Positions 5,877 through 63,895 of a DNA stretch of 64,000 nucleotides are shown here, one piece after another. Each line of letters opens with the position of its first letter. The stretch's first letter is position 1. The stretch is from Ylistrum balloti (lineage: Eukaryota), in contig NW_026782064.1 of assembly GCF_031769215.1 (NCBI RefSeq), positions 1,116,001 through 1,180,000 of the forward strand, read 5' to 3'. A program made the translations under genes and the position numbers. The notes below the pieces were generated by a model that was not told the origin of the DNA, ran no database searches, and saw only the letters and a program-made list of their open reading frames with translations.

Positions 5877-8612
5877 TGTATACTGTAGTTTTACATACTG
5901 TATACTGTAGTTATACATGTTGTATACTGTAGTTATACATACTGTATACTGTAATTATACATGCTGTATACTGTAGTTATACATACTGTAGTTATACATG
6001 CTGTATACTGTAGTTATACATACTGTATACTGTAGTTATACATACTGTAGTTATACATGTTGTATACTGTAGTTATACATACTGTATACTGTAATTATAC
6101 ATGCTGTATACTGTAGTTATACATACTGTGTACTGTAGTTATACATACTGCAGTTATACATGCTCTGTAGTTATACATACTGTATACTGTAGTTATACAT
6201 GCTGTATACTGTAGTTATACATACGGTAGTTATACATACTGTATACTGTAGTTATACATACTGTAGTTATGCATACTGTATACTGTAGTTATACATACTG
6301 TATACTGTAGATATACATGCTGTATACTGTAGTTATACATACTGTAGTTATACATGCTCTTTACTGCAGTTATACATACTGTATACTGTAATTATACATG
6401 CTGTATACTGTAGTTATACATACTGTAGTTATACATACTGTAGTTATACATGCTGTATACTGTAGTTATACATACTGTATACTGTAATTATACATGCTGT
6501 ATACTGTAGTTATACATACTGTAGTTATACATACTGTAGTTATACATGCTGTATACTGTAGTTATACATACTGTAGTTATACATGCTGTATACTGTAGTT
6601 ATACATACTGCAGTTATACATGCTGTATACTGTAATTATACATGCTGTATACAGTAGTTATACATACTGTAGTTATACATGCTGTATACTGTAGTTATAC
6701 ATACTGTAGTTATACATACTGTATACTGTAGTTATACATACTGTATACTGTAGTTAGCTGTATACTGTAGTTATACATACTGTATACTGTAATTATACAT
6801 GCTGTATACTGTAGTTATACATACTGTAGTTATGCATACTGTAGTTATACATACTGTATACTGTAGTTATACATGCTGTATACTGTAGTTATACATACTG
6901 TAGTTATACATGCTATATACTGTAGTTATACATACTGTAGTTATACATACTGTAGTTATACATGCTGTATACTGTAGTTATACATACTGCAGTTATACAT
7001 GCTCTGTAGTAATACATACTGTATACTATAGTTATACATGCTGTATACTGTAGTTATACATACTGTAGTTATACATGCTGTATACTGTAGTTATACATAC
7101 TGTAGTTATACATACTGTATACTGTAGTTATACATACTGTATACTGTAGTTATACATGCTGTATACTGTAGTTATACATGCTGTATACTGTAGTTATACA
7201 TACTGTAGTTATACATACTGTATACTGTAATTATACATACTGTAGTTATACATACTGTAGTTATACATGCTGTATACTGTATTTATACATACTGTATACT
7301 GTAGTTATACATACTGTAGTTATACATGCTGTATACTGTAGTTATACATACTGTAGTTATACATGCTGTATACTGTAGTTATACATACTGTAGTTATACA
7401 TACTGTAGTTATACATGCTGTATACTGTAGTTATACATACTGTAGTTATACATGCTGTATACTGTAGTAATACTTGCTGTATACTGTAGTTATACATGCT
7501 GTAGTTATACATACTGTAGTTATACATGCTGTATACTGTAGTTATACATACTGTATACTGTAGTTATACATACTGTAGTCATGCATGCTGTATACTGTAG
7601 TTATACATTCTGTATACTGTAGTTATACATACTGTAGTTATACATGCTGTATACTGTAGTTATACATACTGTATACTGTAGTTATACATGCTGTATACTG
7701 TAGTTATACATACTGTATACTGTAGTTATACATGCTGTATACTGTAGTTATACATGCTGTATACTGTAGTTATACATGCTGTATACTGTAGTTATACATG
7801 CTGTATACTGTAGTTATACATGCTGTTAACTGTAGTTATACATGCTGTAGTTATACATACTGTATACTGTAGTTATACATGCTGTATACTGTAGTTATAC
7901 ATACTGTAGTTATACATGCTGTATACTGTAGTTATACATGCTGTTAACTGTAATTATACATGCTGTATACTGTAGTTATACATACTGTAGTTATACATGC
8001 TGTATACTGTAGTTAAACATGCTCTGTAGTTATACATACTGTAGTTATACATGCTGTATACTGTAGTAATACTTGCTGTATACTGTAGTTATACATGCTG
8101 TAGTTATACATACTGTAGTTATACATGCTGTATACTGTAGTTATACATACTGTATACTGTAGTTATACATACTGTATACTGTAGTTATACATACTGTAGT
8201 CATGCATGCTGTATACTGTAGTTATACATTCTGTAGTTATACATACTGTATACAGTAGTTATACATGCTGTATACTGTAGTTATACATACTGTATACTGT
8301 AGTTATACATGCTGTATACTGTAGTTATACATACTGTAGTTATACATGCTGTATACTGTAGTTATGCATACTGTATACTGTAGTTATACATGCTGTATAC
8401 TGTAGTTATACATACTGTATACAGTAGTTATACATGCTGTATACTGTAGTTATACATACTGTAGTTATACATGCTGTATACTGTAGTTATACATGCTGTA
8501 TACTGTAGTTATACATACTGTAGTTATACATGCTGTTAACTGTAGTTATACATGCTGTATACTGTAGTTATACATGCTGTAGTTATACATACTGTATACT
8601 GTAGTTATACAT
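5877..8612. repeat. Compound 15/22-bp AT-rich minisatellite (modules TACTGTA/TGCTGTA and GTTATACA), about 2.7 kb
   Basis: Continuous array of tactgtagttataca and tactgtagttatacatgctgta variants directly downstream of the PDSS2 stop codon. Confidence 0.97.
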
Positions 8613-9188
8613 AATTTATGTTGTAGTATGGGCATCTGAACCTATCAAAAATAGTACACGAATTAAAATATTTTGTGTTTTGAAAGCAAAATTATTAGAC
8701 TCAGAGATCCTGATTCACATCAGATGCAATTTTTAGTTATATTGAAACAAATAATGTAAAGAATTGGACAAGTTTTCCTGGTTATGAAGGGTGGTAGATT
8801 TTTGGTGAAACTGCCACCTCTGAATAAATTTCCAGAGAATGCAAGATTTGTAAAATGTTCTATTCGTGTTTTACAATGCATCAGTATTTAATTTACTTTG
8901 TGTGTTTTTAATCTGATCAGTTACACAAGTATAATGATTCTAAGATTTATCGATAGAATCACATTCTTGACTCTCTGTCATAAGTGTAATTATAAATATA
9001 TATCAATGTAAGCATAAGGAAATACATACTCCACCATAAGTATGGGGAAATATTTCCAATGTAAATGTGGTCACAGACGCAAGTAGAGGGACAGTCATAT
9101 TTCCATCAAGTACATGGGGAAATTTATATTTCAACTTTGAATATAGCAAAATTTATACCACCATCAGTAGGTTAACAAAAGGGTAATT

Positions 9189-10354
9189 TATATCTCAACC
9201 TTAAATAAAGGGAAATTATATCTCAACCTTAAATAAAGGGAAATTATATCTCAACCTTAAATAAAGGGAAATCATATCTCAACCTTAAATAAAGGGAAAT
9301 TATATCTCAACCTTAAATAAAGGGAAATTATATCTCAACCTTAAATAAAGGGAAATCATATCTCAACCTTAAATAAAGGGAAATCATATCTCAACCTTAA
9401 ATAAAGGGAAAGCATATCTCAACCTTAAATAAAGGGAAATTATATCTCAACCTTAAATAAAGGGAAATCATATCTCAACCTTAAATAAAGGGAAATCATA
9501 TCTCAACCTTAAATAAAGGGAAATCATATCTCAACCTTAAATAAAGGGAAAATCTCAATAAATGAACCTTAAATAAAGGGAAATTATATCTCAACCTTAA
9601 ATAAAGGGAAATCATATCTCAACCTTAAATAAAGGGAAATCATATCTCAACCTTAAATAAAGGGAAATCATATCACAACATTAAATTAAGGGAAATCATA
9701 TCTCAACATTAAATAAATGGAAATCATATCTCAACCTTAAATAAAGGGAAATTATATCTCAACCTTAAATAAAGGGAAATCATATCTCGACCTTAAATAA
9801 AGGGAAATCATATCTCAACCTTAAATAAAGGGAAATCATATCTCAACCTTAAATAAAGGGAAATTATATCTCAACCTTAAATAAAGGGAAATCATATCTC
9901 AACCTTAAATAAAGGGAAATCATATCTCAACCTTAAATAAAGGGAAAGCATATCTCAACCTTAAATAAAGGGAAATTATATCTCAACCTTAAATAAAGGG
10001 AAATATATCTCAACCTTAAATAAAGGGAAATCATATCTCAACCTTAAATAAAGGGAAATCATATCTCAACCTTAAATAAAGGGAAATCATATCTCAACCT
10101 TAAATAAAGGGAAATCATATCTCAACCTTAAATAAAGGGAAATCATATCTCAACCTTAAATAAAGGGAAAGCATATCTCAACCTTAAATAAAGGGAAATT
10201 ATATCTCAACCTTAAATAAAGGGAAATCATATCTCAACCTTAAATAAAGGGAAATCATATCTCAACCTTAAATAAAGGGAAATCATATCTCAACCTTAAA
10301 TAAAGGGAAATCATATCTCAACCTTAAATAAAGGGAAATTATATCTCAACCTTA
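9189..10354. repeat. 28-bp minisatellite (atatctcaaccttaaataaagggaaatc), about 41 copies
   Basis: Period 28 read directly from the sequence; decayed units lie to the left from about 9045. Confidence 0.97.
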
Positions 10355-10509
10355 GATAGATAATGTGTAAGAATAAGATCAGAACAGAAGCAGTTTATGC
10401 CACGAAATGGTCACAAAGATAATATATGGTTGTTAAACGAGTAGGTCAAAGAATTGTTCTCAAGATAAGCGAAGAACCTCAAATTCAGTTTTTGATACAG
10501 TATATAGCC

Positions 10510-11541
10510 GTACAATGACGAAAACGGTAGGATACAGTTTCTTCGACCTTCTAAGGCTCGCTAGTCATACAGCCGTTTCGTCCTTCCGAGACTGATGACG
10601 ATACAGCTGTTTCGTCCTTCAGTGACTCGATAGTGGTACAGCTGTTTCGTCCTTCTTAGACTCGATAGTGTTACAGCTGTTTCGTACTTCAGTGACTCGA
10701 TAGTGATAGCTGTTTCGTCCTTCAGTGACTCGATAGTGATAGCTGTTTCGTCCTTCTGAGACTCGATAGTGTTAGCTGTTTCGTCCTTCTGAGACTCGAT
10801 AGTGCTAGCTGTTTCGTCCTTCTGAGACTCGTTAATATTACAGCTGTTTCGTCCTTCTGAGACTCGATAGTGTTAGCTGTTTCGTCCTTCTGAGACTCGT
10901 TAGTATTACAGCTGTTTCGTCCTTCAGTGACTCGATAATGGTACAGCTGTTTCGTCCTTCTGAGACTCGTTAATATTACAGCTATTTCGTCCTTCTGAGA
11001 CTCGATGGTGTTAGCTGTTTCGTCCTTCTGAGACTCGTTAGTATTACAGCTGTTTCGTCCTTCAGTGACTCGATAGTGGTACAGCTGTTTCGTCCTTCAG
11101 TGACTCGATAGTGATACAGCTGTTTCGTCCTTCAGTGACTCGATAGTGTTAGCTGTTTCGTCCTTCAGTGACTCGATAGTGGTACAGCTGTTTCGTCCTT
11201 CAGTGACTCGATAGTGATAGCTGTTTCTTCCTTCAGTGACTCGATAGTGATAGCTGTTTCGTCCTTCAGTGACTCGATAGTGATAGCTGTTTCGTCCTTC
11301 AGTGACTCGATAGTAATACAGCTGTTTCGTCCTTCAGTGACTCGATAGTGATACAGCTGTTTCGTCCTTCAGTGACTCGATAGTGATAGCTGTTTCGTCC
11401 TTCAGTGACTCGATAGTGATAGCTGTTTCGTCCTTCAGTGACTCGATAGTGATAGCTGTTTCGTCCTTCAGTGACTCGATAGTTTACAGCTGTTTCGTCC
11501 TCCAGTGACTCGATAGTGATAGCTGTTTCGTCCCTCTGAGA
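10510..11541 (-). repeat. 33/35-bp minisatellite, about 29 copies; the - strand unit resembles a hammerhead ribozyme core
   Basis: + strand unit gactcgatagtgatacagctgtttcgtccttcagt (35 bp) and a 33-bp variant lacking AC. Reverse complement: TCA-CTATCGA-GTC-actgaag-GAC-GAAAC-AGCT-GTA. Confidence 0.95.
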
Positions 11542-13259
11542 CATTATACATTTGATGTTCTTTTGAAATGATCCTATGATGAAAACTTTCAAAATATATG
11601 AATTCAAACTTAATGCATCGACCCATAGATATCCGACATTCATTTCGACCAAGTTTGTTTTTCAGTTTACGTCGCCTACTTTGTATAAAGATTTCAGTCC
11701 CCAAATCTCACTGGCGATTTAGTCGTTCAAATCTGCGATCACTTTGTCGATACTATTTAAGAAATACAAATATGCTGCTGGGAGAGGTAATTAAAATGCA
11801 TCTTAATGCGTATATGGTAAAGTTAATTTGGGTAATAACAATTATAGATCTACATGTTTTGGTACAATTGTGGTAGAATTGTAAATCCGTTCACGATATG
11901 TATGTCTCGTTACTGGTCATATTACTGGAAAAGAACTCCAGAGTGTACCTGTTTTTAACACGTCTGATAAGTCTCGACGTGATGAGATCCGCTCAAGACT
12001 TTGACCTTTCTGTGTTGTAGCCGCGATAACACACATGCTCTTCTTGTAGTACATTTAAATATGATGCAAGTATAAGTAGGAGATTGCTTGTATATGTACA
12101 TCGTATCGCCTCGGCGCTAGATTCACTCAAAAGATTGTTGTAAAAATTAGAATAAGATACAGTAGAGCTAACTAATTAATTAAAACAGCACCATACACAG
12201 AACACATAAGCGAGTATAGCTGAACAACTTCTTCAGTGATACTAGAGACCAAATGTGAGGTAAAGGAGAAAAATTCAGATTGACCGAAACAAATGTTAGA
12301 TAAATGAGGTGACTTACTGCTGGTCTATGAACCTCCACAGGAAGAGTTGGTCGACTGTGCTGTGTTAATTACAGTGGGATATATGCTTAATTTTTGTGCT
12401 GCTATGTAAATGTTTTGTCTCCTTAAAATGTATAATCTACACGAATTTAATACTCTGACCTCTGACCTACTGAAACTGAATTGCGCAATAATGTTAATGG
12501 TAAATATATATAGAGATGTATGGGTTATGCCGTAACGTCATGCCATGTAAACGAAAGACTTCCGCCGACAGGATATGCTGTATGAACGACACGCTCTTCA
12601 GAATTGTTTTGTAATACTTTATTAGACTAAAGGGACGTCAATGTACACATGTACGTTGAAGTTTAACTATGTCAGAAAGGCAATATTATAAAGGTTACCA
12701 TGTCTTCATAGTATACCGGGTACGTTTAGGTAGTCTCGTGTCCTTGGTCAACTAGATAATTCCAAGCAAACAGAAGTGATTAGGATGTTGCAAGATAGCA
12801 CAGACTTTATAACTGTTTAACCATAGGTATCCGTATCAATAATAAGCAAGTACAAACATGTATACATTTATATATACTGCATATATGATTACAGCAATTT
12901 ATGGTACATATTTGATTCTGCGCATCAGATATTTTAAAATTCAAGTTTGAAACATCTATTTTTTATTTTTCCCCATCCTGTTATTTGTAAGGATACCGTG
13001 GAACTTTGAAATGATATTGTATACATGAAATGTAATAAGATATTTTAAAATGTGGTCATACATAATAACCATCTCTACTTTAATATCAAAAGAGCATGGA
13101 CTCGAAGCTTGAGAAAGCGGTCACAGGAACTTGTCTACCAAGTACACAGAATAAAACAGGCAGATAATTTCAAGGTAGATTATAAGCAACTTATACAAAG
13201 AAATTTAAAAACAAAATTGTAATAAATTAATTGCTGATGGTTTGAAGGTCAAGTTATAC

Positions 13260-19716: not shown

Positions 19717-22656
19717 ATGGACGAAAGGAAATACCGATGGTGTGTGGTCAACTTGCTGTTACTTCTTGCGGTTGATGGTGAGTGATTGGAAGTTGTGTAA
19801 TATAACACTGAAAAATACTTCAGTATCATCTCGTCATACTGGAACCCTTAATATTCAATACTTCCGCTTATAATGATAAGAATATTCAGAAACCTTGTCT
19901 TTACTATTCCACATTACCAATGGTATAAGATTATTGTTTAATCATGATTAGATCGAACTGTTTTTTTCTGCTTTTTTCAGGTATTGTTTGTGGAAATTCA
20001 ACAGAAGATTCTACGGTAACGTGTGTCTTAGATTTATGTATATTCCTATCTATTACATCTATATAATCTGGTTTAATGTCCTGTTCCTCTATCAGGAACA
20101 CATCTTTCACAAAATTATAATTATTGTAATTACTTTATGTAAGGTTTGTGTCGGTACGTTGTATGTTTACCGGTATAAAAATAGATTTTAAGTATCAAAT
20201 AAACGTTTGATTAAGGACCGATACCACCAATCCGTGTGTAATTTAATTTATATTCTGTAGCGATACACAGTGTTAGTCCATGATAATATCGTACTTGTAT
20301 GACAAGTTACAATTAGTACCAGTTTCATACTAAAATTATAAAATTCAATGTGTGTCGCCATGCATAACTATTATTTTAATCTGCAAATGTATATGACAAC
20401 ATATTAGTTGTTATAAATATGTCAGCACATGGTGTCTAATGAACGCGAGGAGTTGTATATTTTCCTGTACAGCTCAGAATTAATTTTAAACTATTGTATT
20501 GAACAGATAATTTTGTTTAACAAAGGTCGTTATGTCTAGATTTAACCTTTCCGTCAGACGACGAATAAAAAACGACCCATTAAAACATGTAGGTTTGAAT
20601 TAAATGTCAGTCTTTCTTATAACACGATGGAAGATACTGACTGAAAATATAATGATTTGACTCATACAGTAGTGCAGAGTGATGAATATTACTTAGATTC
20701 ACTTGTGTGGGTAAGGAGTCAAATGTCGTCCAAAGTGCATTGTGTAAACTCCTATTTTCTCCATGGGTTATAATATTCGGGGTATCTATTACAGTAAGCA
20801 CATTTTAAGCTGTGAGGAGATAGCACAAAGCAAGTGATTAGCACCTTTATATACAAATTTAGAAGGATTTTTATTAGAACCAGTTATACATAAAATTCAT
20901 TGGATTTTCGTGCACCTGTCTATCTGGTTTTTAACTTGGTTTGGACTCGTTTGGATTTTACTCGGTTGCCTCCTAGGTTTCCATACTTTTGACCCTTACT
21001 ATCACTGACGAAGCCTAGAACAACGAAACAGAGGTATGATGCATTATAATTCATAAATAAATACATGTATGCCATATCTGTATTTAAACATATTATTGTG
21101 CACGTCTGTTTTACAATCTTTGAATGAACTAATTACGAACAAGCCTGATAGCAAGAATGAAATAAAAAAAGATAGAATGAAGGAGTCACGAATCAGGGTA
21201 CAAATAACTGTGTTACAGTCAATGAGATAGGGAATCTGTTTAGGTAGCAGTTTATTTGCATTTTGCCTGAAATTATGAGATATTCAGGTATAGCAGATAG
21301 GTTAGGAAATCTACACCCTTACATGTATATAAATTTATTACATTGATGATAGAGAAATAAAAATGGTGTAAGTCGAAAATTTCCCCTGATTTCTGACATG
21401 TGATTGCCATAGCTACCTACTCAAAAAATGCAAAAAATGTCCTAAAATAATAATAATGATAAAAAAAACCTCCTACTAATTCCAGCATTACACTACAACT
21501 TTATAGAAGGAATTTATTTCTGAACATCTGTCTTAAAATTAAAATCGTACAACACAGTCATGGTAACCCATTACTTACATTTCTGCCAATTCTAACTCGG
21601 AAATCACAACATGACCACAGGTAAACACTATGAAAATTTCACTTCCTGTAAAGCTAGTTTTTGGTGTGTAGACACAGATTTGAGACTGCCCAAATAATAA
21701 TCTCCAACCCGATGCAAAAATATCCTGAAAATATGAAACCCATGTTGTCCACTTTAACATGAAAAGACCAATATTAGCAATGAGTCATTTTTAAAGTTTT
21801 AAATATAACATTTATAATGTTGTAATCTAACAAAGAAACAAAAATTACCCATGGCCACACCTATTAAATGTGTACTGCTACAGAGTAAACAAACCTGCCA
21901 TCAGCTGCTAACGGATATCTGGTGTTATCTGTCGTCGTATGATAAAAGTCTGTTTTGGAGAACTACTCATACGGTACAAAGATTTCAATGACAGATTAAA
22001 GATGACTGCGCCATCTTGATAATTTTACCCTCATCATTGGATGAATCTTGCTTTAAACTATTCTGAATCAAACAAAATACAAATGTGATAGTTCCCTGTA
22101 TGTTTAAAGTTCAAAATACCTATATGATACAATAGGTATGGATTTACAGTGTATTTCCATGTTGATACTTAGATAATTAGATACAACACGTGTGTATTTA
22201 TATATGAATTAAGTAATTGATAAGATTTTAAATATAAAACCGCGTTATTCCTCTGTATCACTCTTCTATAGCTGCAGTGTAGGAAATACAGAAATAAAGT
22301 TAATGAAGTTGAAATCGGATGGTAAAGTGGTTTTTTACTCGTGCGCCGACAACTTTCAAGCGTGTGTTATTTCTTTTTAGATACAAATGAACACCCCTAA
22401 CAAAGGCTGAATAAAAGATATCAATTAGTGATAATATTACGATGTCAATATCAGTCTTTGTGTTCTGCAGGAAAGCTTCTTCACCAGCAACCGATTCATT
22501 GGTATCACCGCCGGACTGGGCACTTTTCTGTTTATCGGTATATATCTATACACATTATGGAAGTGTACATGTGGCAGTCCTGATGATGAAACAGTCGACA
22601 AAAGGAACCAAGTAGGTAGACATCAACAGAACCAGATAGAAGAAACTAGAACATGA
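19717..22656 (+). CDS. Uncharacterised 93-aa type-I single-pass membrane microprotein (signal peptide plus TM), 3 exons
   Basis: Exons 19717-19777 (donor G|gtgagt), 19981-20015 (acceptor tttttttcag, donor gtaacg) and 22471-22656 (acceptor tgttctgcag); phases 1 and 0 join in frame. Protein: MDERKYRWCVVNLLLLLAVDGIVCGNSTEDSTESFFTSNRFIGITAGLGTFLFIGIYLYTLWKCTCGSPDDETVDKRNQVGRHQQNQIEETRT. Confidence 0.78.
21000..21041 (+). ncRNA. Degenerate minimal type-I hammerhead ribozyme motif (Penelope/retrozyme type)
   Basis: atca-CTGACGA-agcctagaacaac-GAAAC-agag-GTA-tgat. The core boxes are intact, atca/tgat can form stem I, stem III is a single C-G pair, and stem II is disrupted. Confidence 0.55.
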
Positions 22657-32292: not shown

Positions 32293-33712
32293 AGTATGTT
32301 CCAGTACCTAGATGACACAATCTTGTGGTTACTATCAGGAACTACTGGTATGTTCCAGTACCTAGATGACACAATCTTGTGGTTACTATGAGGAACCTAC
32401 TAGTATGTTCCAGTACCTAGATGACACAATCTTGTGGAAACAATCAGGAACTACTAGTATGTTCCAGTCCCTAGATGACACAATCTTGATCTGAGGTTAC
32501 TATCAGGAACTACTAGTATGTTCCAGTACCTAGATGACACAATCTTGTGGTTACTATAAGGAACTACTAGTATGCTCCAGTACCTAGATAACACAATCTT
32601 GTGGTTACTATAAGGAACTACTAGTATGTTCCAGTACTTAGATGACACAATCTTGTGGTTACTATGAGGAACTACTAGTATGTTCCAGTACCTAGATGAC
32701 ACAATATTGTGGTTACTATCAGGAACTACTAGTATGTTCCAGTACCTAGATGACACAATCTTGTGGAAACAATCACGGACTACTAGTATGTTCCAGTACC
32801 TAGATGACACAATATTGTGGTTACTATGAGGAACTACTAGTATGTTCCAGTACCTAGATGACACAATCTTGTGGTTACTATCAGGAACTACTAGTATGTT
32901 CCAGTACCTAGATGCAACAATCTTGTGGTTACTATGAGGAACTACTAGTATGTTCCAGTGCCTAGATGACACAATCTTGTGGTTACTATCAGGAACTACT
33001 GGTATGTTCCAGTACCTAGATGACACAATCTTGATCTGAGGTTACTATCAGGAACTATTAGTATGTTCCAGTACCTAGATGCAACAATCTTGTGGTTACT
33101 ATGAGGAACTACTAGTATGTTCCAGTGCCTAGATGACACAATCTTGTGGTTACTATGAGTAACCTACTAGTATGTTCCAGTACCTAGATGACACAATCTT
33201 GATCTGAGGTTACTATCAGGAACTACTAGTATGTTCCAGTTCCTAGATCACACAATCCTGTGGTTACTATGAGGAACTACTAGTATGTTCCAGTCCCTAG
33301 ATGACACAATCTTGTGGTTACTATAAGGAACTACTAGTATGTTCCAGTTCCTAGATCACACAATCTTGTGGTTACTATAAGGAACCTACTAGTATGTTCC
33401 AGTCCCTAGATGACACAATCTTGTGGTTACTATAAGGAACTACTAGTATGCTCCAGTACCTAGATGACAATCTTGTGGTTACTATAAGGAACTACTAGTA
33501 TGCTCCAGTACCTAGATGACACAGTACTGTGGTAACTTTCAGGAACTACTAGTATGCTCCAGTACCTAGATGACACAATCTTGTGGTTGCTATCAGGAAC
33601 TACTAGTATGCTCCAGTACCTAGATCACACAGACTTGTGGTTACTATAAGGAACTACTAGTATGCTCCAGTACCTAGATAACACAGTACTGTGGTAACTT
33701 TCAGGAACTACT
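32293..33712. repeat. 54-bp minisatellite, about 26 copies, with decayed flanking units extending to about 34140
   Basis: Unit gaactactagtatgttccagtacctagatgacacaatcttgtggttactatcag; it generates the 18-aa-periodic ORF at 32454-33026. Confidence 0.96.
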
Positions 33713-36024
33713 ATCAATTTATAGTGTTTATATCACACGGCCCTAACTTAAATGTTAGAGTCCGCTATCAATTTCTAGTTTATTGATGACACTATGCGGT
33801 GGTAAGTTTTAGAAGCTGCTAGCATGTTCCTCCACTTAGATTTCTAGCATACAGATGACAGTTTTGTGGTAGCTATCAGAAACTACCAATACTTAGATGA
33901 CAGGGTCCTGTATTAAGTATCAAGAACTACTGACATTATAATTTTTAATATTACTATTACTCGGTCTGGTGGTTACTATCAGAAACTGCCATCAAGACCT
34001 AGTGTACTGCTACCAACTTCAAGCAGATAGATAGCACGGTTCTGTGGTAACTTTCTGAAAATTCTGTTCTATCAAGATCTTTTATCTAATTGACAGGGTT
34101 ATGTGAAAACTATCAGGCAGTACTATGAAACTTTGGTATTTAGATGGAACCGGCCTGTGCTACTTACCTTCATTAGCATAAGATACCCCATATCAGCAGC
34201 AGTGAAGTAGCACACTCCAGATGGGTATAGTAGAACTTGATATCAGTGTGGGAAGGTTGCTGAAACGGGTCTGAGTCCCGAGACTGTTTCTTTGGCTACT
34301 TTGAATGCTTAGCTATCCTGTGGTAAATAGTTAGTTGAGTGAACTCCATTCATAAAATCCCATTCCAAATTCGATCTACCGATCATGGCCGTATTAATAA
34401 GCCGTTTACGGTCTGTATTCCTCTCGTCTAAACATGGGTGTTTTTAGTCAGCGCTCTTTGCAACAAAATGTGTTACATGTTGATAACCAAGTATTTGCCT
34501 AGTCGTAAGAACCATTGCTTAACTACTCCATGACAAAATACTGTCGATTTAAAGCCTGTTACCATCGGACTTGTAGGGTATAGCAATACCTGCTTCTAAT
34601 ACACAGGACCTGTTAAGTCAAGTCACTCATGTGTGGCCGGATTATGGTGGAACGACTAATTCGTTATTAAAGCAGATAGCTTTACCAGTATAGTTAAATC
34701 AGATTTAATGAATCACACCGAACAATGACCAATACACATGCATATGTATATAAAATATTAAAGGATCATATGTTCTTATGAATTTCCTTACACTATAAGC
34801 CATCTACAAGATAGGGAAATATAAAATCCGAACTTAAAACTTCAAAATTATTATAAATGCTTACTTTATCAATTAGATTATATTCTATTGTAGACAACTA
34901 CACGTCAATCATGTTACTTTTAGAAACAATGTACACTTTGTACTGAATTAAATGTTCATTTGTTACTTTGTTTATTGTCCTTAACACTTTAAATACAAGC
35001 GTTTGTTCCATCCGATTACCCACAATGCTCTTTATAACATACCCACTGGAGTGCTGTATATTTCTAAATATGGTTTGTTTTTCTTGAATATACTGATAAA
35101 CATCTGCCATTTTATAAATGGTATATGCCCTTGTTTGAAGTAAACACATTTGGTCCTTTCGAATTAAGGTTTATATCAAATTTACGTACATAATTCATGC
35201 TTTAGTTTTGTTGTAACGATCGAAAAGTAATATTTACATAAGTTAGAATTCAGTTAATAAATGGCATAACGTTCACGAATTTTATCACAAATCAAAGTCA
35301 AATTCTATTATACAACGTTATGTACAGAAGGATATATATTAGTACACAAACTAGTGTGCATGTATAATCTTCATTCGTCTGGGTGTATTGAATTACATTT
35401 TATATATGTACCACATACAAAGTGTTCAATATAATTATAAGGTGTTGTCAGGTAAGGCATTAAGCCTGTTGTGATTTATAGGATACCTTAGTCGTCAGCA
35501 CTAAGGCAGATCTAGCTGTATATAATGGAGTTCGTCATACATTACAATGCAGGATTTATCTTTAAGCTTGATAGATCAGCTGCTTCTCGATTTTACTGAC
35601 TGTAAACCCGAATCGACTGCAGTATATTGTTACAATTTTGTGTATTGTTTTCTACCTTTTTTCTGTTTACCATCTTGTCACACTATTTTCGACCTTATTG
35701 TACACAGAATTATAGCACAGCCGGAAAAGTTGGACAATTTATTACCATCTCGCGCACTACGTACGTATGTCATCGAAACATTATATTTTATTGTAAAATT
35801 ACCAACCTGACAGAAATATTTCAAACCAAAAGAAAATAGCCTCTTCCGACGTCAATTTCATGTGACATTTGTCTCATTAAACAATTACTACATCATCAGT
35901 AGTATAGACATTCATCCTCTGGTTGTCCTTAACCTGATTACCATAAAAGGATTGGAAAGCCTGCTGCAGCAATGACTGTTGTATTTATCGTTACCAATGA
36001 AACACAAGAAAGTAACCGCATTTC

Positions 36025-53426: not shown

Positions 53427-54990
53427 CACTGGCGGCGGACATGGTGTGGTGTTCTCTGTCAGGCGGCGGACAGGATGTGGTGTTCTCTGTCAGGAGGCGG
53501 ACATGGTGTGGTGTTCTCTGTAAGGCGGCGGACAGGGTGTGGTGATCTCTGTCAGGCGGCGGACAGTGTGTGGTGTTCTCTGTCAGGCGGCGGACAGGGT
53601 GTGATGTTCTCTGTCAGGCGGCGGACAGGTTGTGGTGTACTCTGTAAGGCGGCGTACAGGGTGTGGTTTCTCTGTCAGGCGGCGGACAGGGTGTGGTGTT
53701 CTCTGTCAGGCGGCAGACAGGATGTGGTGTTCTCTGTCAGGCGACGGACAGGGTGTGGTGTTCTCTGTCAGGCGGCGGACAGGATGTGGTGTTCTCTGTC
53801 AGGCGGCAGACAGGATGTGGTGTTCTCTGTCAGGCGACGGACAGAAGTGGTGTTCTCTGTCAGGCAGCGGACAGGATGTGGTGTTCTCTGTCAGGCACCG
53901 GACAGGGTGTGATGTTCTCTGTCAGGCGGCGGACAGGGTGTGGTGTTCTCTGTCAGGCGGTGGGCAGTGTGTGTTGTTATCTGTCAGGCGGCGGACAGGG
54001 TGTGATGTTCTCTGTCAGGCGGCGGACAGAATGTGGTGTTCTCTGTCAGGCGACGGACAGGAAGTGGTGTTCTCTGTCAGGCGGCGGACAGGGTGGGGTG
54101 TTCTCTGTCAGGTCGCGGGCAGTGTGTGTTGTTATCTGTCAAGCGGCGGACTGGTTGTGGTGTTCTCTGTAAGGCGGCGGACAGGGTGTGGTTTCTCTGT
54201 CAGGCGGCGGACAGGGTGTGATGTTTTCTTTCAGGCGGCGGACATGGTGTGGTGTTCTCTTTCAGGCGGCGGACAAGGTGTGGTGTTCTCTGTCAGGCGG
54301 CGGACAGGGTGTGGTGTTCTCTGTAAGGTGGCGGACAGGGTGTGGTCTCTCTGTCAGGCGGCGGACAGGGTGTGGTGTTTTCTGTCAGGCGGCGGACAGG
54401 GTGTGGTGTTCTCTGTAAGGTGGCGGACAGGGTGTGGTCTCTCTGTCAGGCGGCGGACAGGGTGTGGTGTTTTCTGTCAGGCGGCGGACATGATGTGTTG
54501 TTCTCTGTCAGGCGGCGGACTGGTTGTGGTTTCTCTGTCAGGTGGCGGACAGTGAGTGGTGTTCTTTGTCAGGCGGTGGACAGGGTGTGGTGTTCTCTGT
54601 AAGGCGGCGGACAGGGTGTGGTTTCTCTGTCAGGCGGCGGACAGGGTGTGGTGTTCTCTGTCAGGCGGCGGACAGGGTGTGATGTTATCTGTCAGGCGGC
54701 GGACAGGGTGTGGTGTTCTCTATCAGGCGGCGGACAAGGTGTGGTGTTCTCTGTCAGACGGCGGTCAAGGTGTGGTGTTCTCTGTCAGGCGGCGGACAAG
54801 GTGTGGTGTTCTCTGTCAGACGGCGGTCAAGGTGTGGTGTTCTCTGTCAGGCGGTGGACAGGTTGTAGTGTTCTCTGTCAGGCGGCGGACATGGTGTGGT
54901 GTTCTCTGTCAGGCGGCGGACAGGGTGTGGTGTTCTCTGTCAGGCGGCGGACAGGGTGTGATGTTCTCTGTCAGGCGAAGGACAAGGTGT
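53427..54990. repeat. 31-bp GC-rich, strand-asymmetric minisatellite, about 50 copies
   Basis: Unit ggcggcggacagggtgtggtgttctctgtca; it produces the overlapping SVRRRTGCGVLCQAADRVWCSLSGGGQGVVF ORFs. Confidence 0.97.
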
Positions 54991-55979
54991 TGTGTCCTCA
55001 ATCCTGGTTTAGATTGGTAATTTTTACATAAAGATGTAGAATAAATGAGTAGGATAACCCCAGAAGAGAAGAAAGGACAATATGGGACTTAATATTATAT
55101 TCTATGTATATAACAAACACATAATTATTATTATTTCAAACAAGATATCAATCAATCCTTTCTGATTGTTCTGCGTAGTATTTCTGACTCCGTGATCATT
55201 TTCAGTTACTTATATTTACAGATACAAATGAGTTTATGTTTGCAGTGAGAAATCAATCGAGCTCCTACATGTACATAGGACGGGAGTATGTACCATTTTA
55301 AGTCTTTTTATAGTCCATAATCTTTCGATTAGTGTAAGATTAAGTACGTTTTACCTGTATAAAGTGAAGCCTAATTATTTCCCTACACGAGCATATTGAC
55401 AAGGTATTACGTACTGGACATATTATTTAAATATATGTAAAACTTTAAAGCTTCTCACCTACTCAGGTACGTTCTAAAAGGAAACGTAGTCATTATTTTT
55501 TCTTTTTGTAAGAAAAAGGAATATTAAAATGCATTTAACTTCAAGTCTTCCAACTTTCAAAGTCCATACAGGAATAATGAACTCCCATACCAAACACCTA
55601 AATACATTTATACGCTCTCCAAACGTCTGGTTTTATTTTGAAAACTGGTTATATTTGGAAAGGACAGTAACAACCATAACTGTGTGAACGTGGCTACCTG
55701 AAAACCATTTGTACATATTAGATGTGTCTTATCTGTATACTCTGAACATACACGTATGTGTGAGTATGGAGATGGGATTTACTTGTCCACAAACATAATT
55801 ATATAGAAGCCGTTCACCTATACACAAACTTTGTATATTAAGCAGATTAGTTTTACTTGTTGACAAACTTTGTACAAAATTATGGTGACGTGGGCAAACT
55901 TAGTACATACCATTATTAGATGATATGACGCAGTTTAACTGTCTACAAACTTTTCTTAAGTGAGATAAAATACCACGTT

Positions 55980-58580
55980 TGGCTAGTTATGCTAACCGTC
56001 TTTCGCGCTCTGGTTAGTTATGCTGAAGCGCGGTCCTACTGACCATACTTCGCGCTCTGGTTTTTATTCTGAAGCGCGGTCCTACTGACCATACTTCGCG
56101 CTCTGGTTTTTATGCTGAAGCGCGGTCCTACTGACCATACTTCGCGCTCTGGTTAGTTATGCTGAAGCGCGGTCCTACTGACCATACTTCGCGCTCTGGT
56201 TTTTATGCTGAAGCGCGGTCCTACTGACCATACTTCGCGCTCTGGTTAGTTATGCTGAAGCGAGGTCCTACTGACCATACCTCGCGCTCTGGTTAGTTAT
56301 GCTGAAGCGCGGTCCTACTGACCATACTTCGCGCTCTGGTTTTTCTGCTAAAGCGCGGTCCTACTGACCATACTTCGCGCTTTGGTTAGTTATGCTGAAG
56401 CGCGGTCCTACTGACCATACTTCGCGCTCTGGTTTTTATGCTAAAGTGCGGTCCTACTGACCATACTTCGCGCTCTGGTTTTTCTGCTAAAGCGCGGTCC
56501 TACTGACCATACTTCGCGCTCTGGTTTTTCTGCTAAAGCGCGGTCCTACTGACCATACTTCGCGCTTTGGTTAGTTATGCTGAAGCGCGGTCCTACTGAC
56601 CATACTTCGCGCTCTGGTTTTTATGCTAAAGTGCGGTCCTACTGACCATAATTCGCGTTCTGGTTAGTTATGCTGAAGCGCGGTCCTAATGACCATACTT
56701 CGCGCTCTGGTTTTTATGCTAAAGTGCGGTCCTACTGACCATACTTCGCGTTCTGGTTAGTTATGCTGAAGCGCGGTCCTAATGACCATACTTCGCGCTC
56801 TGGTTTTTCTGCTAAAGCGCGGTCCTACTGACCATACTTCGCGCTCTGGTTTTTATGCTAAAGTGCGGTCCTACTGACCATAATTCGCGTTCTGGTTAGT
56901 GCTGAAGCGCGGTCCTAATGACCATATGCTGAAGCGCGGTCCTGACCATACTTCGCGCTCTGGTTAGTTATGCTGAAGCGCGGTCCTACTGACCATACTT
57001 CGCGCTCTGGTTAGTTATGCTGAAGCGCGGTCCTACTGACCATACTTCGCGCTCTGGTTAGTTATGCTAAAGCGCGGTCCTACTGACCATACTTCGCGCT
57101 CTGGTTAGTTATGCTGAAATGTGGTCCTACTGACCATACTTCGCGCTCTGGTTAGTTATGCTGAAGCGCGGTCCTACTGACCATACTTCGCGCTCTGGTT
57201 TTTATGCTGAAGCGCGGTCCTACTGACCATACTTCGCGCTCTGGTTTTTATGCTGAAGCGCGGTCCTACTGACCATACTTCGCGCTCTGGTTAGTTATGC
57301 TGAAGCGAGGTCCTACTGACCATACCTCGCGCTCTGGTTAGTTATGCTGAAGCGCGGTCCTACTGACCATACTTCGCGCTCTGGTTTTTCTGCTAAAGCG
57401 CGGTCCTACTGACCATACTTCGCGCTTTGGTTAGTTATGCTGAAGCGCGGTCCTACTGACCATACTTCGCGCTCTGGTTTTTATGCTAAAGTGCGGTCCT
57501 ACTGACCATAATTCGCGTTCTGGTTAGTTATGCTGAAGCGCGGTCCTAATGACCATACTTCGCGCTCTGGTTAGTTATGCTGAAGCGCGGTCCTACTGAC
57601 CATACTTCGCGCTCTGCTTAGTTATGCTGAAGCGCGGTCCTACTGACCATACTTCGCCCTCTGGTTAGTTATGCTGAAGCGCGGTCCTACTGACCATACT
57701 TCGCGCTTTGGTTAGTTATGCTAAAGCGCGGTCCTAATGACCATACTTCGCGCTCTGGTTTTTATGCTGAAGTGTGGTCCTACTGACCATACTTCGCGCT
57801 CTGGTTAGTTATGCTGAAGCGCGGTCCTACTGACCATACTTCGCGCTCTGGTTAGTTATGCTGAAGCGCGGTCCTATTGACCATACTTCGCGCTCTGGTT
57901 TTTATGCTGAAGCGCGGTCCTACTGACCATACTTCGCGCTCTGGTTTTTATGCTGAAGCGCGGTCCTACTGACCATACTTTGCGCTCTGGTTAGTTATGC
58001 TGAAGCGCGGTCCTACTGACCATACTTCGCGCTCTGGTTAGTTATGCTGAAGCGCGGTCCTGCTGACCATACTTCGCGCTCTGGTTAGTTATGCCAAAGT
58101 TCAGGCTTGCTGACTGTACTTCGCGTCGTGATTAATCAAACTGTAGCGCACTTGATATTCATGCTACATTGCGATCCTTCCGCCTGTACTGGTTAGTTAT
58201 ACTGAAACAAAATCCTAGTGACAATTCTTCGCTCTTTTGGTTAGTTATGTTGTAGCGCGGTCCTCCCTGACGGTTAGTTATGGCGAAGCGCAACCCTGCT
58301 GACTATTCTTTCCGCGATAGTTAGTTATGTTGAGGTGCGGTCCTCCCTGACTGTACTTCGCGCCGCAGTTAGTTATGGCGAAGCGCAACCCTGCTGACTA
58401 TTCTTTCCGCGACAGTTAGTTATGTTGAGGCGCGGTCCTCCCTGACTGTACTTCGCGCCGCAGTTAGTTATGGCGAAGCGCAACCCTGCTGACTATTCTT
58501 TCCGCGACAGTTAGTTATGTTGAGGCGCGGTCATCCCTGACTGTACTTCGCGCTGCGGTTAGTTATGGCGAAGCGTGGTC
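55980..58580. repeat. 46/47-bp CpG-rich minisatellite (about 45 homogeneous units to about 58095, then a diverged dimeric tail)
   Basis: Unit gcgctctggttagttatgctgaagcgcggtcctactgaccatacttc (47 bp) and a 46-bp ttttt variant. Confidence 0.97.
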
Positions 58581-59163: not shown

Positions 59164-62100
59164 ATGTCGGCAATTTACGGACAGGATCCTCTATCGCCGT
59201 TTGCAAGGTAAGACTAAGGTCACATCTACGTCATAAGTATATCGTAGGGTGCAGTCTTTATAGAATGATTTCATGACTGTCCCTACGTTATAAACAATAT
59301 GAAGGATCATGTGTCAGACATGTGTTAGTTAGGTGAGGACAGGGATGTATGTACACTTAATCAAATATCGGTCACTTCATATTGAGATGGTGTATTTCAA
59401 TCATATTTACATTTTGTATATCGTTAAAATCTACCAGTTTTCGTCAATCAATAATGACATGTACATTGACGGGTATTTTGGAAGTTTTAAGAAAATCATT
59501 ATTCTTCTAATATCAAACTACATGTAGCATGACAAAATTATGAACAGTAACCAGCCTATGTACCAACATCAGCCACGTCCTCCGGACCGGTGATTTCCAG
59601 AGGACCATGTCAGCTTACAGACACATAAAACAATCGTTTATACCATGTTTCTGATCAATTTTCACAGTTATTATCGACGTAATGGCATAATTCCCCCGAT
59701 TATGGATTTAAACAGACCTCCGGGGTACGTCCGTATTTGTTATGTAGAACGCCGTTTGATCAGTAGATCTTATGGCGTTACAGCCTTACTGCTTGTTTAG
59801 CAATCTATTTTCAGTGGTAACTATATGTAAATATACGTTGTACGAAATGGCGGAACGTTCTGTACTTGTACGATCAGTATGCACGGTACTGTCAGGCTCC
59901 CAATGTTTCACAGTGTTAATGAAGAAGGAATATTTGTATGGAGAGGTTTTTGGTATTTTTTGACTGTATTCGATATAACTGTGAACTGTCTTAATCTAAT
60001 GTTTGAATAGGAAGAGTTGAATTTACGGGGAAGGTAATTTGTTTGGCTCCAGTGTTTCTATCTTCAGGCTGTTTCTCATCGTAGTCATTGACCCTGGATA
60101 TCTGCTGTTATACACGTAGTTATCCTTTACGAACCGTACATACATATTTACATACCGTTTTGAAATCTTTTAAGTTTATCAAAATAACCCTGTATATATT
60201 CATTCCAAATCCTAGCCACGTATTTTATCATAGAACTGACCAGGGTTAGGAATGTAGTTTTACCGTAAGGAAAGCTTAGGGTGGTGTTTTCTTACACTAT
60301 AGATATAATTTATTTATATGCTATATTTGAGATCCTTTTATTCTTCGTTTGTTGATGAAAGGTTCATAGAATTTTGAAGATTGCTGGTGCATTGGTAGGA
60401 TATAGCATTTTCGGACGTTAAATTGAATTTTTGTTTTCAAAAAGTATTTAAGTCTGTCTAGAGGATGTCACGGTCTTGTTCTTTGTTGACGTAAAAATGT
60501 TTATATGGTATAAATGTTAGAAGTAGATCTGATATGTAAGTGTACGCTTTTTCACAAAATTATTGAAGGTTTATTTCCGTTTTTTGTGCTTCAACGTTAC
60601 CATTTAGACTCGGTATATGTAAGATGAAGTTGAAGTCATCATGCCTCTGACTGCTGTTAAACAAAAGTTTTTAAAACATTTAGAAATGATGTAAAACTGT
60701 TACAGGCCCCCTGGTACTGTCGACAACCAATTGTGGTCGCCCCGGTTAAAGCCACGCTGGGGGGAATATGACGTCATCAGTAAAGATGGGCGTGACTGTC
60801 GGGTGTCAGATGGTCTATCGAGATTGTGAGTAAGATAGCAGACAGACTGCAGCAATATCTCAATTTATTAATAACTTAGATATACTTACATAGAGGCTGT
60901 AAAATTATAAAGATGTTAAAACGAAATTGAGATGAAACTATCGTTAAAATTATAATCAAGCTTCATACAATGTGCATTAGTTACCAATCAATAACAAAAA
61001 CTCCAGTGTAAAGGTTTTTGTTTGGAATGAGTTGGACTTTTCAACTGTTCACATGAACGGTATTGCCCGATGCTCAGTGACTTGTTTATATGATTTGTAT
61101 GTACGAAGAAATGCCATAGCTATGATGATGATTATAATTGGTAATAGTTTAATTAACATGTGGTTAACTCTTTAATTAAACAGAATTTAATGGTTGATCC
61201 AGTGATTATTAAAGCGCTGATACGCCTTCTGGGCGGCTGATGTGTTCTGAACTTGTTAACAAATGGTAAAGACATTGTTGTAACCTGGTCTTATTAATGT
61301 ATATTGACAGTCGCAGTAATTTTGACTGTTGTCATCAAGCTGAAGTCGTCGGAAGCCATGATCCAATCGATACCTTCGGCTGTCATAGGTAAGTTCTTGT
61401 CTTGTAATCCTTTCGGAGTTACCTCCCTTCGCCCTGCTCAACGCTATGCTGAAGCGTAAGGTAAGCGTAGAAAATACGAAAGATTGTGAAAAAAAGACTG
61501 GAAATTTACACCATAATCATGCCCATGGTCTCCGGACAAGTCCGAGTCCATTACACCAGACTGGAGATTTAGACAAAATGCAAAGCCTTCGGTCTTCGTA
61601 TAAATCACAATCCATCATTACCAGATTGGAGATTTAGAGCCGCCATTACTAAGACTTCAGTCTCTAGTCCGAATCCATCATAATACACTGGCGATTTACA
61701 CCAATGTCAGGCCTATGGTTTCGAGACAAGCCCGAATCTATCCTAACAGACTGGAGATTTACACCCTTATCAGGCCTACCGTGTCCGGACAATACCAAAT
61801 CCTTAATGTCAGACTGGATATTTAGACCTTGCCAGGCCTACTGTGGCTGGATAACACCGAATCCATGATAACAGACTTGAGATTTAGACCTTGCTAGGCC
61901 TACTGTGACTGGATAACACCGAATCCATGATAACAGACTTGAGATTTAGACCTTGTCAGGCCTACTGTGGCTGGATAACACCGAATTCATGATAACAGAC
62001 TGGAGATTTAGACCTTGTCAGGCCTACTGTGACTGGATAACACCGAATCCATGATAATAGACTTGAGATTTAGACCTTGTCACGCCTACTGTGGCTGGAT

Positions 62101-63401: not shown

Positions 63402-63895
63402 AAATCACAACTCACAATTAAACTTACACGGTCGTCTTAGAACTCACAATTAAACGTACACTATCGTCTCAGAACTTACAGTTCAATTTACACGGTCGTC
63501 TTAGAACTCACAACTCAACTTACACGGTCGTCTTAGAACTCACAGTTCAACTTACACGGTCGTCTTAGAACTCACAACTCAACTTACACGGTCGTCTTAG
63601 AACTCACAGTTCAACTTACACGGTCGTCTTAGAACTCACAATTAAACTTACACTATCGTCTCAGAACTTACAGTTCAATTTACACGGTCGTCTTAGAACT
63701 CACAACTCAGCTTACACGGTCGTCTTAGAACTCACAACTCAACTTACATGGTCGTCTCAGAGCTCACAGCTCAACTTACACGGTCGTCTCGGAACTCACA
63801 GTTCAACTTACACGATCGTCTCGGAACTCACAACTCAACTTACACGGTCGTCTCAGAACCCACAACTCCACTTACAAGATCGTCTTTGAACTCAC
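63402..63895. repeat. 32-bp minisatellite, about 15 copies
   Basis: Unit agaactcacaactcaacttacacggtcgtctt. Confidence 0.95.

What the first reader, a model, noticed from the sequence alone, without database searches (positions are those of the whole stretch)
10510..11541. Minisatellite whose unit is a hammerhead ribozyme core, amplified about 29 times in a disabled form
Seen: on the - strand the 35-bp unit parses completely as TCA + CTATCGA + GTC-actgaag-GAC (stem II) + GAAAC + AGCT + GTA. Some units read CTAACGA (+ strand tcgttag at 10897-10903 and 11035-11041), one base from CTGACGA, and the terminal unit has an extended stem GTCTC-aga-GGGAC. Established: minimal type-I hammerheads of Penelope-like elements and retrozymes have CUGANGA, stem II, GAAA, a single C-G pair closing a palindromic tetraloop (here AGCT) and a GUH cleavage triplet; G5-to-A is the classic inactivating change. 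Hammerhead satellites are known (newt, schistosome, cave cricket) but with monomers of hundreds of bp. Inference: slippage between gtat at the 5' stem-I arm and at the cleavage site duplicated only the catalytic core. Every unit I checked lacks G5, and the 33-bp units also lose the GU of the triplet, so only non-cleaving copies seem to have been amplified, 2.5 kb downstream of (and co-oriented with) DUF1772 paralog A. A ribozyme-derived minisatellite of this size would be an unusual origin story.
Basis: partly seen in the sequence, partly recalled or inferred. Interest (0 to 1): 0.8.

Follow-up and report, generated by a model that had tools for sequence, protein, structure and literature searches.

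The report
Decayed hammerhead-ribozyme minisatellite, helix I lost
A 1-kb run of about 30 head-to-tail 33/35-base units is a dead, shortened local offshoot of a 45-base self-cutting-RNA (hammerhead) repeat found thousands of times in this animal genome, and its growth despite being dead suggests such arrays expand by ordinary DNA copying slips, not by ribozyme activity.

Summary
TRF finds a 33/35-bp array (68-bp higher-order period) at 10557-11533. On the - strand I parse 29 units plus a leading unit.

- **Dead core:** no unit has CTGANGA (21 CTATCGA, 2 CTAACGA). Only 15 of 29 keep the GTA triplet.
- **Parent family:** the hammerhead origin rests on homology. The same genome holds 8,577 exact copies of GGACGAAACAGCTGTA, mostly 45 bp apart. 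Of these, 4,188 carry an intact CTGANGA and helix II. Sampled units pass Rfam Hammerhead_1 (up to 41.6 bits, cut-off 34).
- **What was lost:** each window unit equals a 45-bp family unit minus the 10-nt helix-I hairpin (12 nt in the 33-mers), with G5-to-A and mostly A6-to-T changes.
- **Local origin:** the array still abuts the 3' tail of the dispersed element that carries these ribozymes. The 35-bp junction occurs nowhere else in the genome.

My reading is an old insertion with an already dead unit, expanded locally by slippage or unequal exchange. No RNA data exist.

This scan had already noted the 45-nt parent satellite elsewhere in this genome (s1-249757, s1-234339, s1-244081).

The parts
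10536..11520 (-). Array of 29 units of 33/34/35 bp. Each is a family hammerhead unit without the helix-I hairpin and with a mutated CUGANGA box.
   Evidence: TRF. Unit parse. Alignment A1 to 45-bp family units shows a 10- or 12-column gap at TGATGTAGCA. Rfam gives only sub-threshold Hammerhead_3 (21.5 bits) and Hammerhead_1 (17.7 bits) matches.
11521..11560 (-). Leading (5'-most) unit. It keeps CATCA, the family's 5' helix-I arm. The core box has decayed to aatgtataat, and helix II is extended (GTCTC-aga-GGGAC).
   Evidence: Sequence. Alignment with family 5' flanks. Homology of the flank further upstream is weak and not significant.
11048..11520 (-). Block of the most derived units (helix II GTCACTGAAGGAC, box CTATCGA). 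The 33-mers and 35-mers are mixed, and six 33-mers are identical.
   Evidence: table.
10741..11047 (-). Block closer to the family consensus (helix II GTCTCAGAAGGAC). 35-mers with CTAACGA or TTAACGA alternate with 33-mers with CTATCGA, giving the 68-bp higher-order period.
   Evidence: table. TRF period 68. Both Hammerhead_3 sub-threshold hits lie here.
10536..10604 (-). Two diverged edge units. The last reads CTAGCGA-GCCTTAGAAGGTC-GAAGA-AACT-GTA and leads into TCCTAC, the decayed 3' helix-I arm.
   Evidence: It shares GCCTTAGAAGGTCGAA with only one other genomic locus, C411.
10410..10535 (-). 3' tail of the dispersed hammerhead-bearing element (tcattgt..ggct.tactgtatc..aattt..cttgagaacaattcttt).
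   Evidence: MAFFT alignment with 15 family loci. Genome BLAST hit to C411 at 78% over 76 nt, E 2.3e-7. The tail profile hits 10518-10481 (E 0.53 over 64 kb, but exactly at the expected position).
12130..12300 (-). A second, decayed single-unit copy of the same dispersed element, co-oriented, about 600 bp upstream of the array.
   Evidence: Tail profile hit 12183-12143, E 2e-4. Sequence.
20890..21130 (+). A third copy of the element with one hammerhead. CTGACGA is intact, helix II has decayed (AGCC/CAAC), and GAAAC-AGAG-GTA-TGATGC follows.
   Evidence: 5'-flank profile hit 20907-20988, E 1.1e-5. Pattern hit 21005-21029. Sequence.

Best explanation
The array is a non-catalytic DNA fossil. A short dispersed non-autonomous element carries a minimal type-I hammerhead, often expanded into 45-bp arrays. 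One copy inserted here long ago (inferred). Its hammerhead unit had already lost G5, and it lost the 10-nt helix-I hairpin (TGATG-TAG-CATCA reduced to TCA). That loss came either by excision of the hairpin between AT microhomologies or by duplication of the 35-nt internal segment. This 35-bp unit then multiplied locally by replication slippage or unequal exchange. Along the way it picked up A6-to-T, helix-II changes and a 2-bp loss of the GU of the cleavage triplet (the 33-mers), and it formed a 68-bp higher-order repeat. Its RNA, if any is made, cannot fold into or act as a hammerhead. Shown: the homology, the deletion, the core changes and the restriction to one locus. Inferred: the order of events and the DNA-level mechanism.
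For: **Parent family.** There are 8,577 exact GGACGAAACAGCTGTA sites, spaced mostly 45 bp apart (reversed-pattern control 0). Of these, 4,188 have CTGANGA plus helix II. Sampled units score up to 41.6 bits against RF00163, cut-off 34. The 45-bp consensus is CATCA-CTGACGA-GTCC..GGAC-GAAAC-AGCT-GTA-TGATG-TAG.

**Deletion.** Alignment A1 shows window units co-linear with family units apart from a 10- or 12-column gap over the helix-I hairpin.

**Shared flank.** The family's 3' tail follows the last window unit.

**Local origin.** The 35-type junction occurs only at this locus (9 hits, all C207). No 35-type unit with an intact core exists anywhere.

**Dead founder.** All 29 units, including the diverged edge units, have A at core position 5.

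**DNA-level growth.**
- Variants cluster in blocks and form a 68-bp higher-order repeat.
- The window is packed with unrelated minisatellites.
- The neighbouring 28-bp array is also locus-specific.
- Family arrays with dead cores (CTGCCGA) and a 37-bp helix-II-deleted array exist too.

**No structure.** A window trimer folds no better than shuffles (z +0.19). A family trimer does (z -2.73).
Against: - No RNA data exist for this organism in the run index, so transcription and any RNA role are untested.
- Homology of the 5' flank to the element is weak, so the insertion may be 5'-truncated, or I may have its left boundary wrong.
- The order 'dead first, amplified later' is inferred from shared states. 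Homogenisation could in principle have spread A5 across all units later, though the diverged edge units make that less likely.
- Copy number rests on a single assembly.
Confidence: 0.85

Rival explanations
1. RNA-mediated origin. The array was made by rolling-circle reverse transcription of a tiny self-cleaved or circular hammerhead RNA, as proposed for retrozymes, rather than by DNA slippage.
For: The parent belongs to the class of hammerhead tandem repeats for which circRNA intermediates are proposed (PMC7229834). Tandem head-to-tail units are the expected product.
Against: Every unit lacks G5, most lack A6, half lack the GU triplet and all lack helix I. No unit-length RNA could therefore be released by self-cleavage. 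The unit type occurs at one locus only. Variants lie in blocks with a higher-order period, which is typical of unequal exchange.
Confidence: 0.05
2. The dead array is kept for a function. One example is an uncleavable multimeric transcript that pairs with, or competes against, the live 45-nt hammerhead RNAs through the shared GAAAC-AGCU palindrome. Another is a protein-binding or regulatory minisatellite near the neighbouring gene.
For: GAAAC-AGCT is kept in 27 of 29 units, and helix II is largely maintained. The array is present in all four individuals laid.
Against: Conservation among units is what recent amplification alone would give. The fold is no better than shuffles. No RNA evidence exists. 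The region holds three unrelated locus-specific minisatellites within 5.7 kb, which points to a mutational hot spot rather than selection.
Confidence: 0.07
3. Chance resemblance: an ordinary minisatellite whose unit merely happens to look like a hammerhead core.
For: Rfam scores are below the gathering thresholds (17.7-21.5 bits against 34 and 48.5).
Against: The units are 86% identical over all 35 aligned positions to a family of thousands of bona fide hammerhead units (my count on the unit and family consensus sequences; the layout is). They share its flanking tail. The relaxed descriptor gives 10 hits against 0 in shuffles.
Confidence: 0.01

Closest known systems
45-bp hammerhead minisatellite family of this same genome
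   Same: The box, helix II, GAAAC, AGCT loop and GTA run in the same order and are 86% identical. The 3' tail of the carrier element is the same. Both are organised in tandem.
   Different: The period is 33/35 bp, not 45 bp. The helix-I hairpin is deleted. G5 (and mostly A6) is mutated, and half the units lack the GU of the triplet. The unit type is confined to one locus.
Metazoan non-LTR retrozymes and hammerhead satellites (newt satellite 2; coral, mussel and axolotl repeats; PMC7229834)
   Same: Type-I hammerhead with a 1-2-bp helix III capped by a palindromic tetraloop, repeated head to tail.
   Different: [quoted passage not shown] Here the monomer is less than a whole ribozyme, it is dead, and its expression is unknown.
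Minimal hammerheads of Penelope-like elements (PMC4209133; PMC8557442)
   Same: Small type-I or min-HHR motifs near the 3' end of a retroelement-like unit. They are massively dispersed, mostly as truncated copies, and are thought to act as dimers.
   Different: No RT/GIY-YIG ORF lies within about 1.5 kb of the roughly 40 sampled family loci scanned. The carrier looks like a non-autonomous element about 300-350 bp long. Arrays of the bare ribozyme are not described for these elements.
Sm-alpha SINE-like element of schistosomes (from my own knowledge; cited as Ferbeyre et al. 1998 within PMC4209133)
   Same: A short dispersed non-autonomous element that carries a hammerhead.
   Different: ARAGORN detects no tRNA-like head in the scallop element. 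The scallop ribozyme is prone to expand into minisatellites.

Membership tests
Hammerhead ribozyme (Rfam CL00010: RF00163, RF00008) | Conserved core box C3-U4-G5-A6-N7-G8-A9 | tested here: not met
   0 of 29 units (21 CTATCGA, 2 CTAACGA, 2 TTAACGA, others).
Hammerhead ribozyme (Rfam CL00010: RF00163, RF00008) | G12-A13-A14 plus A15.1 (GAAA) after helix II | tested here: met
   GAAAC in 27 of 29 units.
Hammerhead ribozyme (Rfam CL00010: RF00163, RF00008) | NUH cleavage triplet closing helix III | tested here: inconclusive
   GTA is present in 15 of 29 units. The fourteen 33-bp units lack the GT.
Hammerhead ribozyme (Rfam CL00010: RF00163, RF00008) | Helix I flanking the core | tested here: not met
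   The 13-nt hairpin TGATG-TAG-CATCA of the family is reduced to 3 nt. The residual arms give A-U, C/C, U-A, A/C, read directly from the sequence.
Hammerhead ribozyme (Rfam CL00010: RF00163, RF00008) | Score at or above the Rfam gathering threshold | tested here: not met
   No hit at gathering. The best scores are 21.5 bits (cut-off 48.5) and 17.7 bits (cut-off 34). Family units elsewhere reach 41.6 bits.
Hammerhead ribozyme (Rfam CL00010: RF00163, RF00008) | Self-cleavage | not testable with these tools
   This needs in vitro transcription. I predict none, because established mutagenesis shows G5 and A6 to be essential (my own knowledge).
45-bp hammerhead minisatellite family of this genome | Sequence homology of the unit and of the carrier element's tail | tested here: met
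   Alignment A1, tail alignment, and the BLAST hit to C411 at E 2.3e-7.
45-bp hammerhead minisatellite family of this genome | 45-bp period with one complete ribozyme per unit | tested here: not met
   Period 33/35 bp. In 19 sampled family loci, 192 anchor-to-anchor spacings (by far the commonest value) are 45 bp.
Metazoan non-LTR retrozyme | Tandem monomers of about 150-450 bp, each with an active type-I hammerhead | tested here: not met
   The monomer is 33-35 bp with a dead core. Size range is from PMC7229834.
Metazoan non-LTR retrozyme | Expression as linear and circular monomer RNAs | not testable with these tools
   No RNA run holds the stretch.
Penelope-like element pLTR hammerhead | Location in the terminal repeat of an element that encodes RT and a GIY-YIG endonuclease | tested here: inconclusive
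   No non-repeat ORF suggestive of RT lies within about 1.5 kb of the sampled family loci. The window flanks are single-copy. Trans-mobilisation by such elements was not tested.
Minisatellite | Tandem array of 10-100-bp units spanning about 1 kb | tested here: met
   TRF: 28.8 copies, 977 bp.

The most novel reading that the evidence does not exclude
The 45-nt parent family may be an undescribed class of ribozyme-only 'micro-retrozyme' satellites. They would be transcribed and self-processed into about 45-nt RNAs. This helix-I-less dead array would then be a natural control showing that array growth is uncoupled from catalysis. A less likely version is that the dead array is retained as an uncleavable partner or competitor RNA of the live family.
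Probability: 0.2. Interest if true: 0.7.

Novelty: new variant of a known kind. Interest (0 to 1): 0.45.

Why it matters
Hammerhead-bearing tandem repeats in animals are thought to spread through self-cleaved, circularised RNAs, with monomers of 150-450 bp. This genome holds thousands of repeats whose monomer is only the ribozyme. At this locus a version that cannot cleave, having no G5, no helix I and often no cleavage triplet, still grew to about 30 copies. That is a natural control. It suggests that, at least here, array expansion is a DNA-level process that does not depend on ribozyme activity. This bears on how to read copy numbers of genomic hammerheads. In itself the array is a decayed repeat with no evidence of function.

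Tried and rejected
- **Rfam at gathering thresholds** on the whole window: nothing. Only sub-threshold hammerhead hits appear with the E-value mode.
- **35-bp units with an intact core** elsewhere in the genome: none.
- **A larger multi-copy element around the array.** The 11530-12100 flank is single-copy, and 10359-10560 has one partial relative.
- **The 5' flank of the element at the array's upstream side:** not significant.
- **Penelope-like ORFs next to family loci:** none. The long ORFs found are repeat artefacts.
- **A tRNA-like head in the carrier element:** ARAGORN finds none.
- **RNA evidence:** no RNA run on record. I laid DNA contigs instead. The 'joints' skipping 316-577 bp are most likely repeat-collapse artefacts of short contigs, so I do not read them as copy-number alleles.
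- **The GCCTTAGAAGGTC variant as a subfamily marker:** only two genomic copies.
- **DUF1772 neighbour:** not detected by Pfam on single ORFs or by a genome-wide PF08592 search. Left open.
- **Literature:** no paper in the held library describes 45-nt or 35-nt hammerhead minisatellites or bivalve hammerhead satellites. Subscription journals are not covered.
- **Organism:** other notes of this scan call it a scallop. I did not test that.

Full report
**1. The observation**

Tandem Repeats Finder reports one array at 10557-11533. Its period is 33 (35-bp consensus) and 68, with 28.8 copies and 88-89% matches.

Read on the - strand and cut after each AGCT, it gives 29 units between 11520 and 10536. 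There are 14 units of 33 bp, 13 of 35 bp and 2 of 34 bp. A leading unit lies at 11560-11521.

- a prefix, GTA+TCA (or variants) in the long units and ATCA/AACA in the short ones
- a heptamer
- a 13-nt helix-II hairpin
- GAAAC
- AGCT

The heptamer counts are:

| Heptamer | Units |
|---|---|
| CTATCGA | 21 |
| TTAACGA | 2 |
| other variants | 1 each |
| CTGANGA | 0 |

Fifteen units keep GTA, and the fourteen 33-mers lack the GT. The 5'-most unit has the extended stem GTCTC-aga-GGGAC. One correction applies: CTATCGA differs from CUGANGA at two invariant positions (G5 and A6), not one.

A descriptor relaxed at positions 5 and 6 hits 10 times in the window. It hits 0 times in 100 dinucleotide-preserving shuffles.

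**2. Is it hammerhead-derived?**

Rfam finds nothing at gathering thresholds. With permissive settings it gives Hammerhead_3 at 21.5 bits (cut-off 48.5) and Hammerhead_1 at 17.7 bits (cut-off 34) on the CTAACGA/TTAACGA units. In the Hammerhead_3 alignment the model's hairpin positions are deleted.

The decisive evidence comes from the rest of the genome (648 Mb; the window is C207:1116001-1180000):
- RF00163 gives matches above its cut-off at 27 listed places, many exactly 45 bp apart.
- The 16-mer GGACGAAACAGCTGTA occurs 8,577 times, against 0 for the reversed control, mostly at 45-bp spacing.
- TRF on sampled loci gives 45-bp arrays with the consensus CATCA-CTGACGA-GTCC-TAGAA-GGAC-GAAAC-AGCT-GTA-TGATG-TAG. 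This is a complete minimal type-I hammerhead. Its helix I closes across the unit junction (TGATG-TAG-CATCA).
- Of 5,611 units matching GAGTC-N3-9-GACGAAACAGCTGTA, 4,188 (75%) have CTGAN in front.

That criterion clearly fails to refute the idea.

**3. Relation of the window unit to the family unit**

In alignment A1 two consecutive window units are co-linear with two consecutive 45-bp units. The exception is a 10-column gap (12 columns in the 33-mers) that removes TGATGTAGCA. That is the 3' arm, the loop and part of the 5' arm of helix I.

By my count on the two consensus units, 30 of the 35 remaining positions are identical (86%).

The residual arms cannot pair (A-U, C/C, U-A, A/C, read directly from the sequence). 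The three nucleotides between GTA and the core box would also have to serve two adjacent units at once.

A trimer of window units folds no better than shuffled sequence (z +0.19). A trimer of family units does fold better (z -2.73).

**4. Genomic setting**

The family hammerhead, single or expanded, sits in a short dispersed element with conserved flanks. About 100-200 bp lie upstream, ending in ..cctcagtcgcctcctaggcttcaacatttaggcccttag. A tail of about 90-125 bp lies downstream, tttaattcattgtttggctctactgtatctaactctaaatt...

No RT-like ORF lies within about 1.5 kb of the sampled loci. ARAGORN sees no tRNA-like head. The carrier therefore looks non-autonomous. Its relation to Penelope-like elements, which carry such ribozymes near their 3' ends (PMC4209133, PMC8557442), is plausible but untested.

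In the window, the last diverged unit and the following about 125 bp (10535-10410, - strand) align with this tail. A genome BLAST of 10359-10560 finds one relative, on C411, at E 2.3e-7. Upstream homology is weak.

Two more copies of the element lie in the window:
- a decayed one at about 12300-12130 (-)
- a single-hammerhead copy at about 20890-21130 (+)

**5. Local origin**

The junction type GAAACAGCTRTA-NNN-CTAWCGAGTC occurs nine times in the genome, all in this array. No 35-type junction with CTGANGA occurs anywhere. The immediate flanks are single-copy.

Contigs from four samples of two studies reach into the array from both sides with few differences. They also contain array-internal pieces identical to the window. 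The array is therefore real and shared between individuals. Copy number cannot be judged from such contigs.

**6. History and mechanism (inferred)**

All units carry A at core position 5, including the diverged edge units (CTAGCGA; helix II GCCTTAGAAGGTC). All have the short period. The founder was therefore most likely already dead and already hairpin-less.

From the low-coordinate edge inward, helix II runs GCCTTAGAAGGTC, GTCTCGGAAGGAC, GTCTAAGAAGGAC/GTCTCAGAAGGAC (near the family's GTCTTAGAAGGAC) and then GTCACTGAAGGAC. The box runs from CTAACGA to CTATCGA.

Variants lie in blocks. A 35+33 pair forms the 68-bp higher-order repeat, and six 33-mers are identical. These are the usual marks of slippage and unequal exchange.

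The family hairpin is flanked by AT..AT (GTAT|GATGTAGCAT|CA). The data do not separate them.

The setting supports a DNA-level process:
- The window holds at least eight other minisatellite arrays.
- Three locus-specific arrays lie within 5.7 kb here. They have 22/37/59-bp, 28-bp and 33/35-bp units. Only the 28-bp and 33/35-bp arrays were checked for locus-specificity.
- Within the family, dead-core 45-bp arrays (CTGCCGA) and a 37-bp helix-II-deleted array also exist.

Amplification thus does not track catalytic competence.

**7. Known relatives and novelty**

[quoted passage not shown] Minimal hammerheads of Penelope-like elements are described as mostly single, dispersed motifs (PMC4209133).

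I found nothing on ribozyme-sized (45-nt) or sub-ribozyme (33/35-nt) hammerhead minisatellites in the searchable library. That library omits most subscription journals.

Earlier notes of this scan report the 45-nt satellite elsewhere in this genome (s1-249757, s1-234339, s1-244081). I had reached the family independently, and my tests agree with those notes.

The present array is a degenerate variant of that family. Its value is as a natural control showing that expansion does not need catalysis.

**8. Limits**

- No RNA run is on record, so transcription is unknown.
- Self-cleavage was not tested.
This is inconclusive for short exons and does not bear on the finding.
- The organism (a scallop according to other notes) was not verified here.

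Noticed in passing
window 9178-10358: A 28-bp minisatellite of 42 copies at 95% matches lies 200 bp from the hammerhead array. Its unit occurs only at this locus in the genome (21 exact 20-mer hits, all C207).
   Followed up: partly
window 5877-8627: A 2.7-kb degenerate array with 15/22/37/59-bp periods (TGTATACTGTAGTTATACATAC). It is the third minisatellite within 5.7 kb. The window also holds arrays at 32293-33713, 53431-54999, 56002-58094, 61669-62545 and 63409-63895.
   Followed up: no
window 20890-21130 (+) and 12130-12300 (-): Two further copies of the dispersed hammerhead-bearing element. One has a single hammerhead with intact CTGACGA but a decayed helix II. The other is heavily decayed.
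   Followed up: partly
L050:20-514 (G000:C4, about 392.4 kb): A 37-bp array (13 copies) whose unit is the family hammerhead with most of helix II deleted (CATCACTGACGAG-GGACGATACCGCTGT..). It lies beside 45-bp arrays whose units read CTGCCGA (A6 changed). These are other disabled variants that were also amplified.
   Followed up: partly
L009:1-921 and L071:1700-2300 (- strand): Unrelated minisatellites (42-bp, and roughly 36-37-bp by eye in L071) lie directly beside hammerhead elements at other loci. The element may tend to sit in, or to seed, minisatellite-prone DNA.
   Followed up: no
L011, L013, L028, L041 (about 150-230 bp upstream of the hammerhead): A conserved head motif of the carrier element (..ttcattcgaatagtggcayggttcagaa..) loosely recalls Pol III A and B boxes set very close together. 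ARAGORN finds no tRNA.
   Followed up: partly
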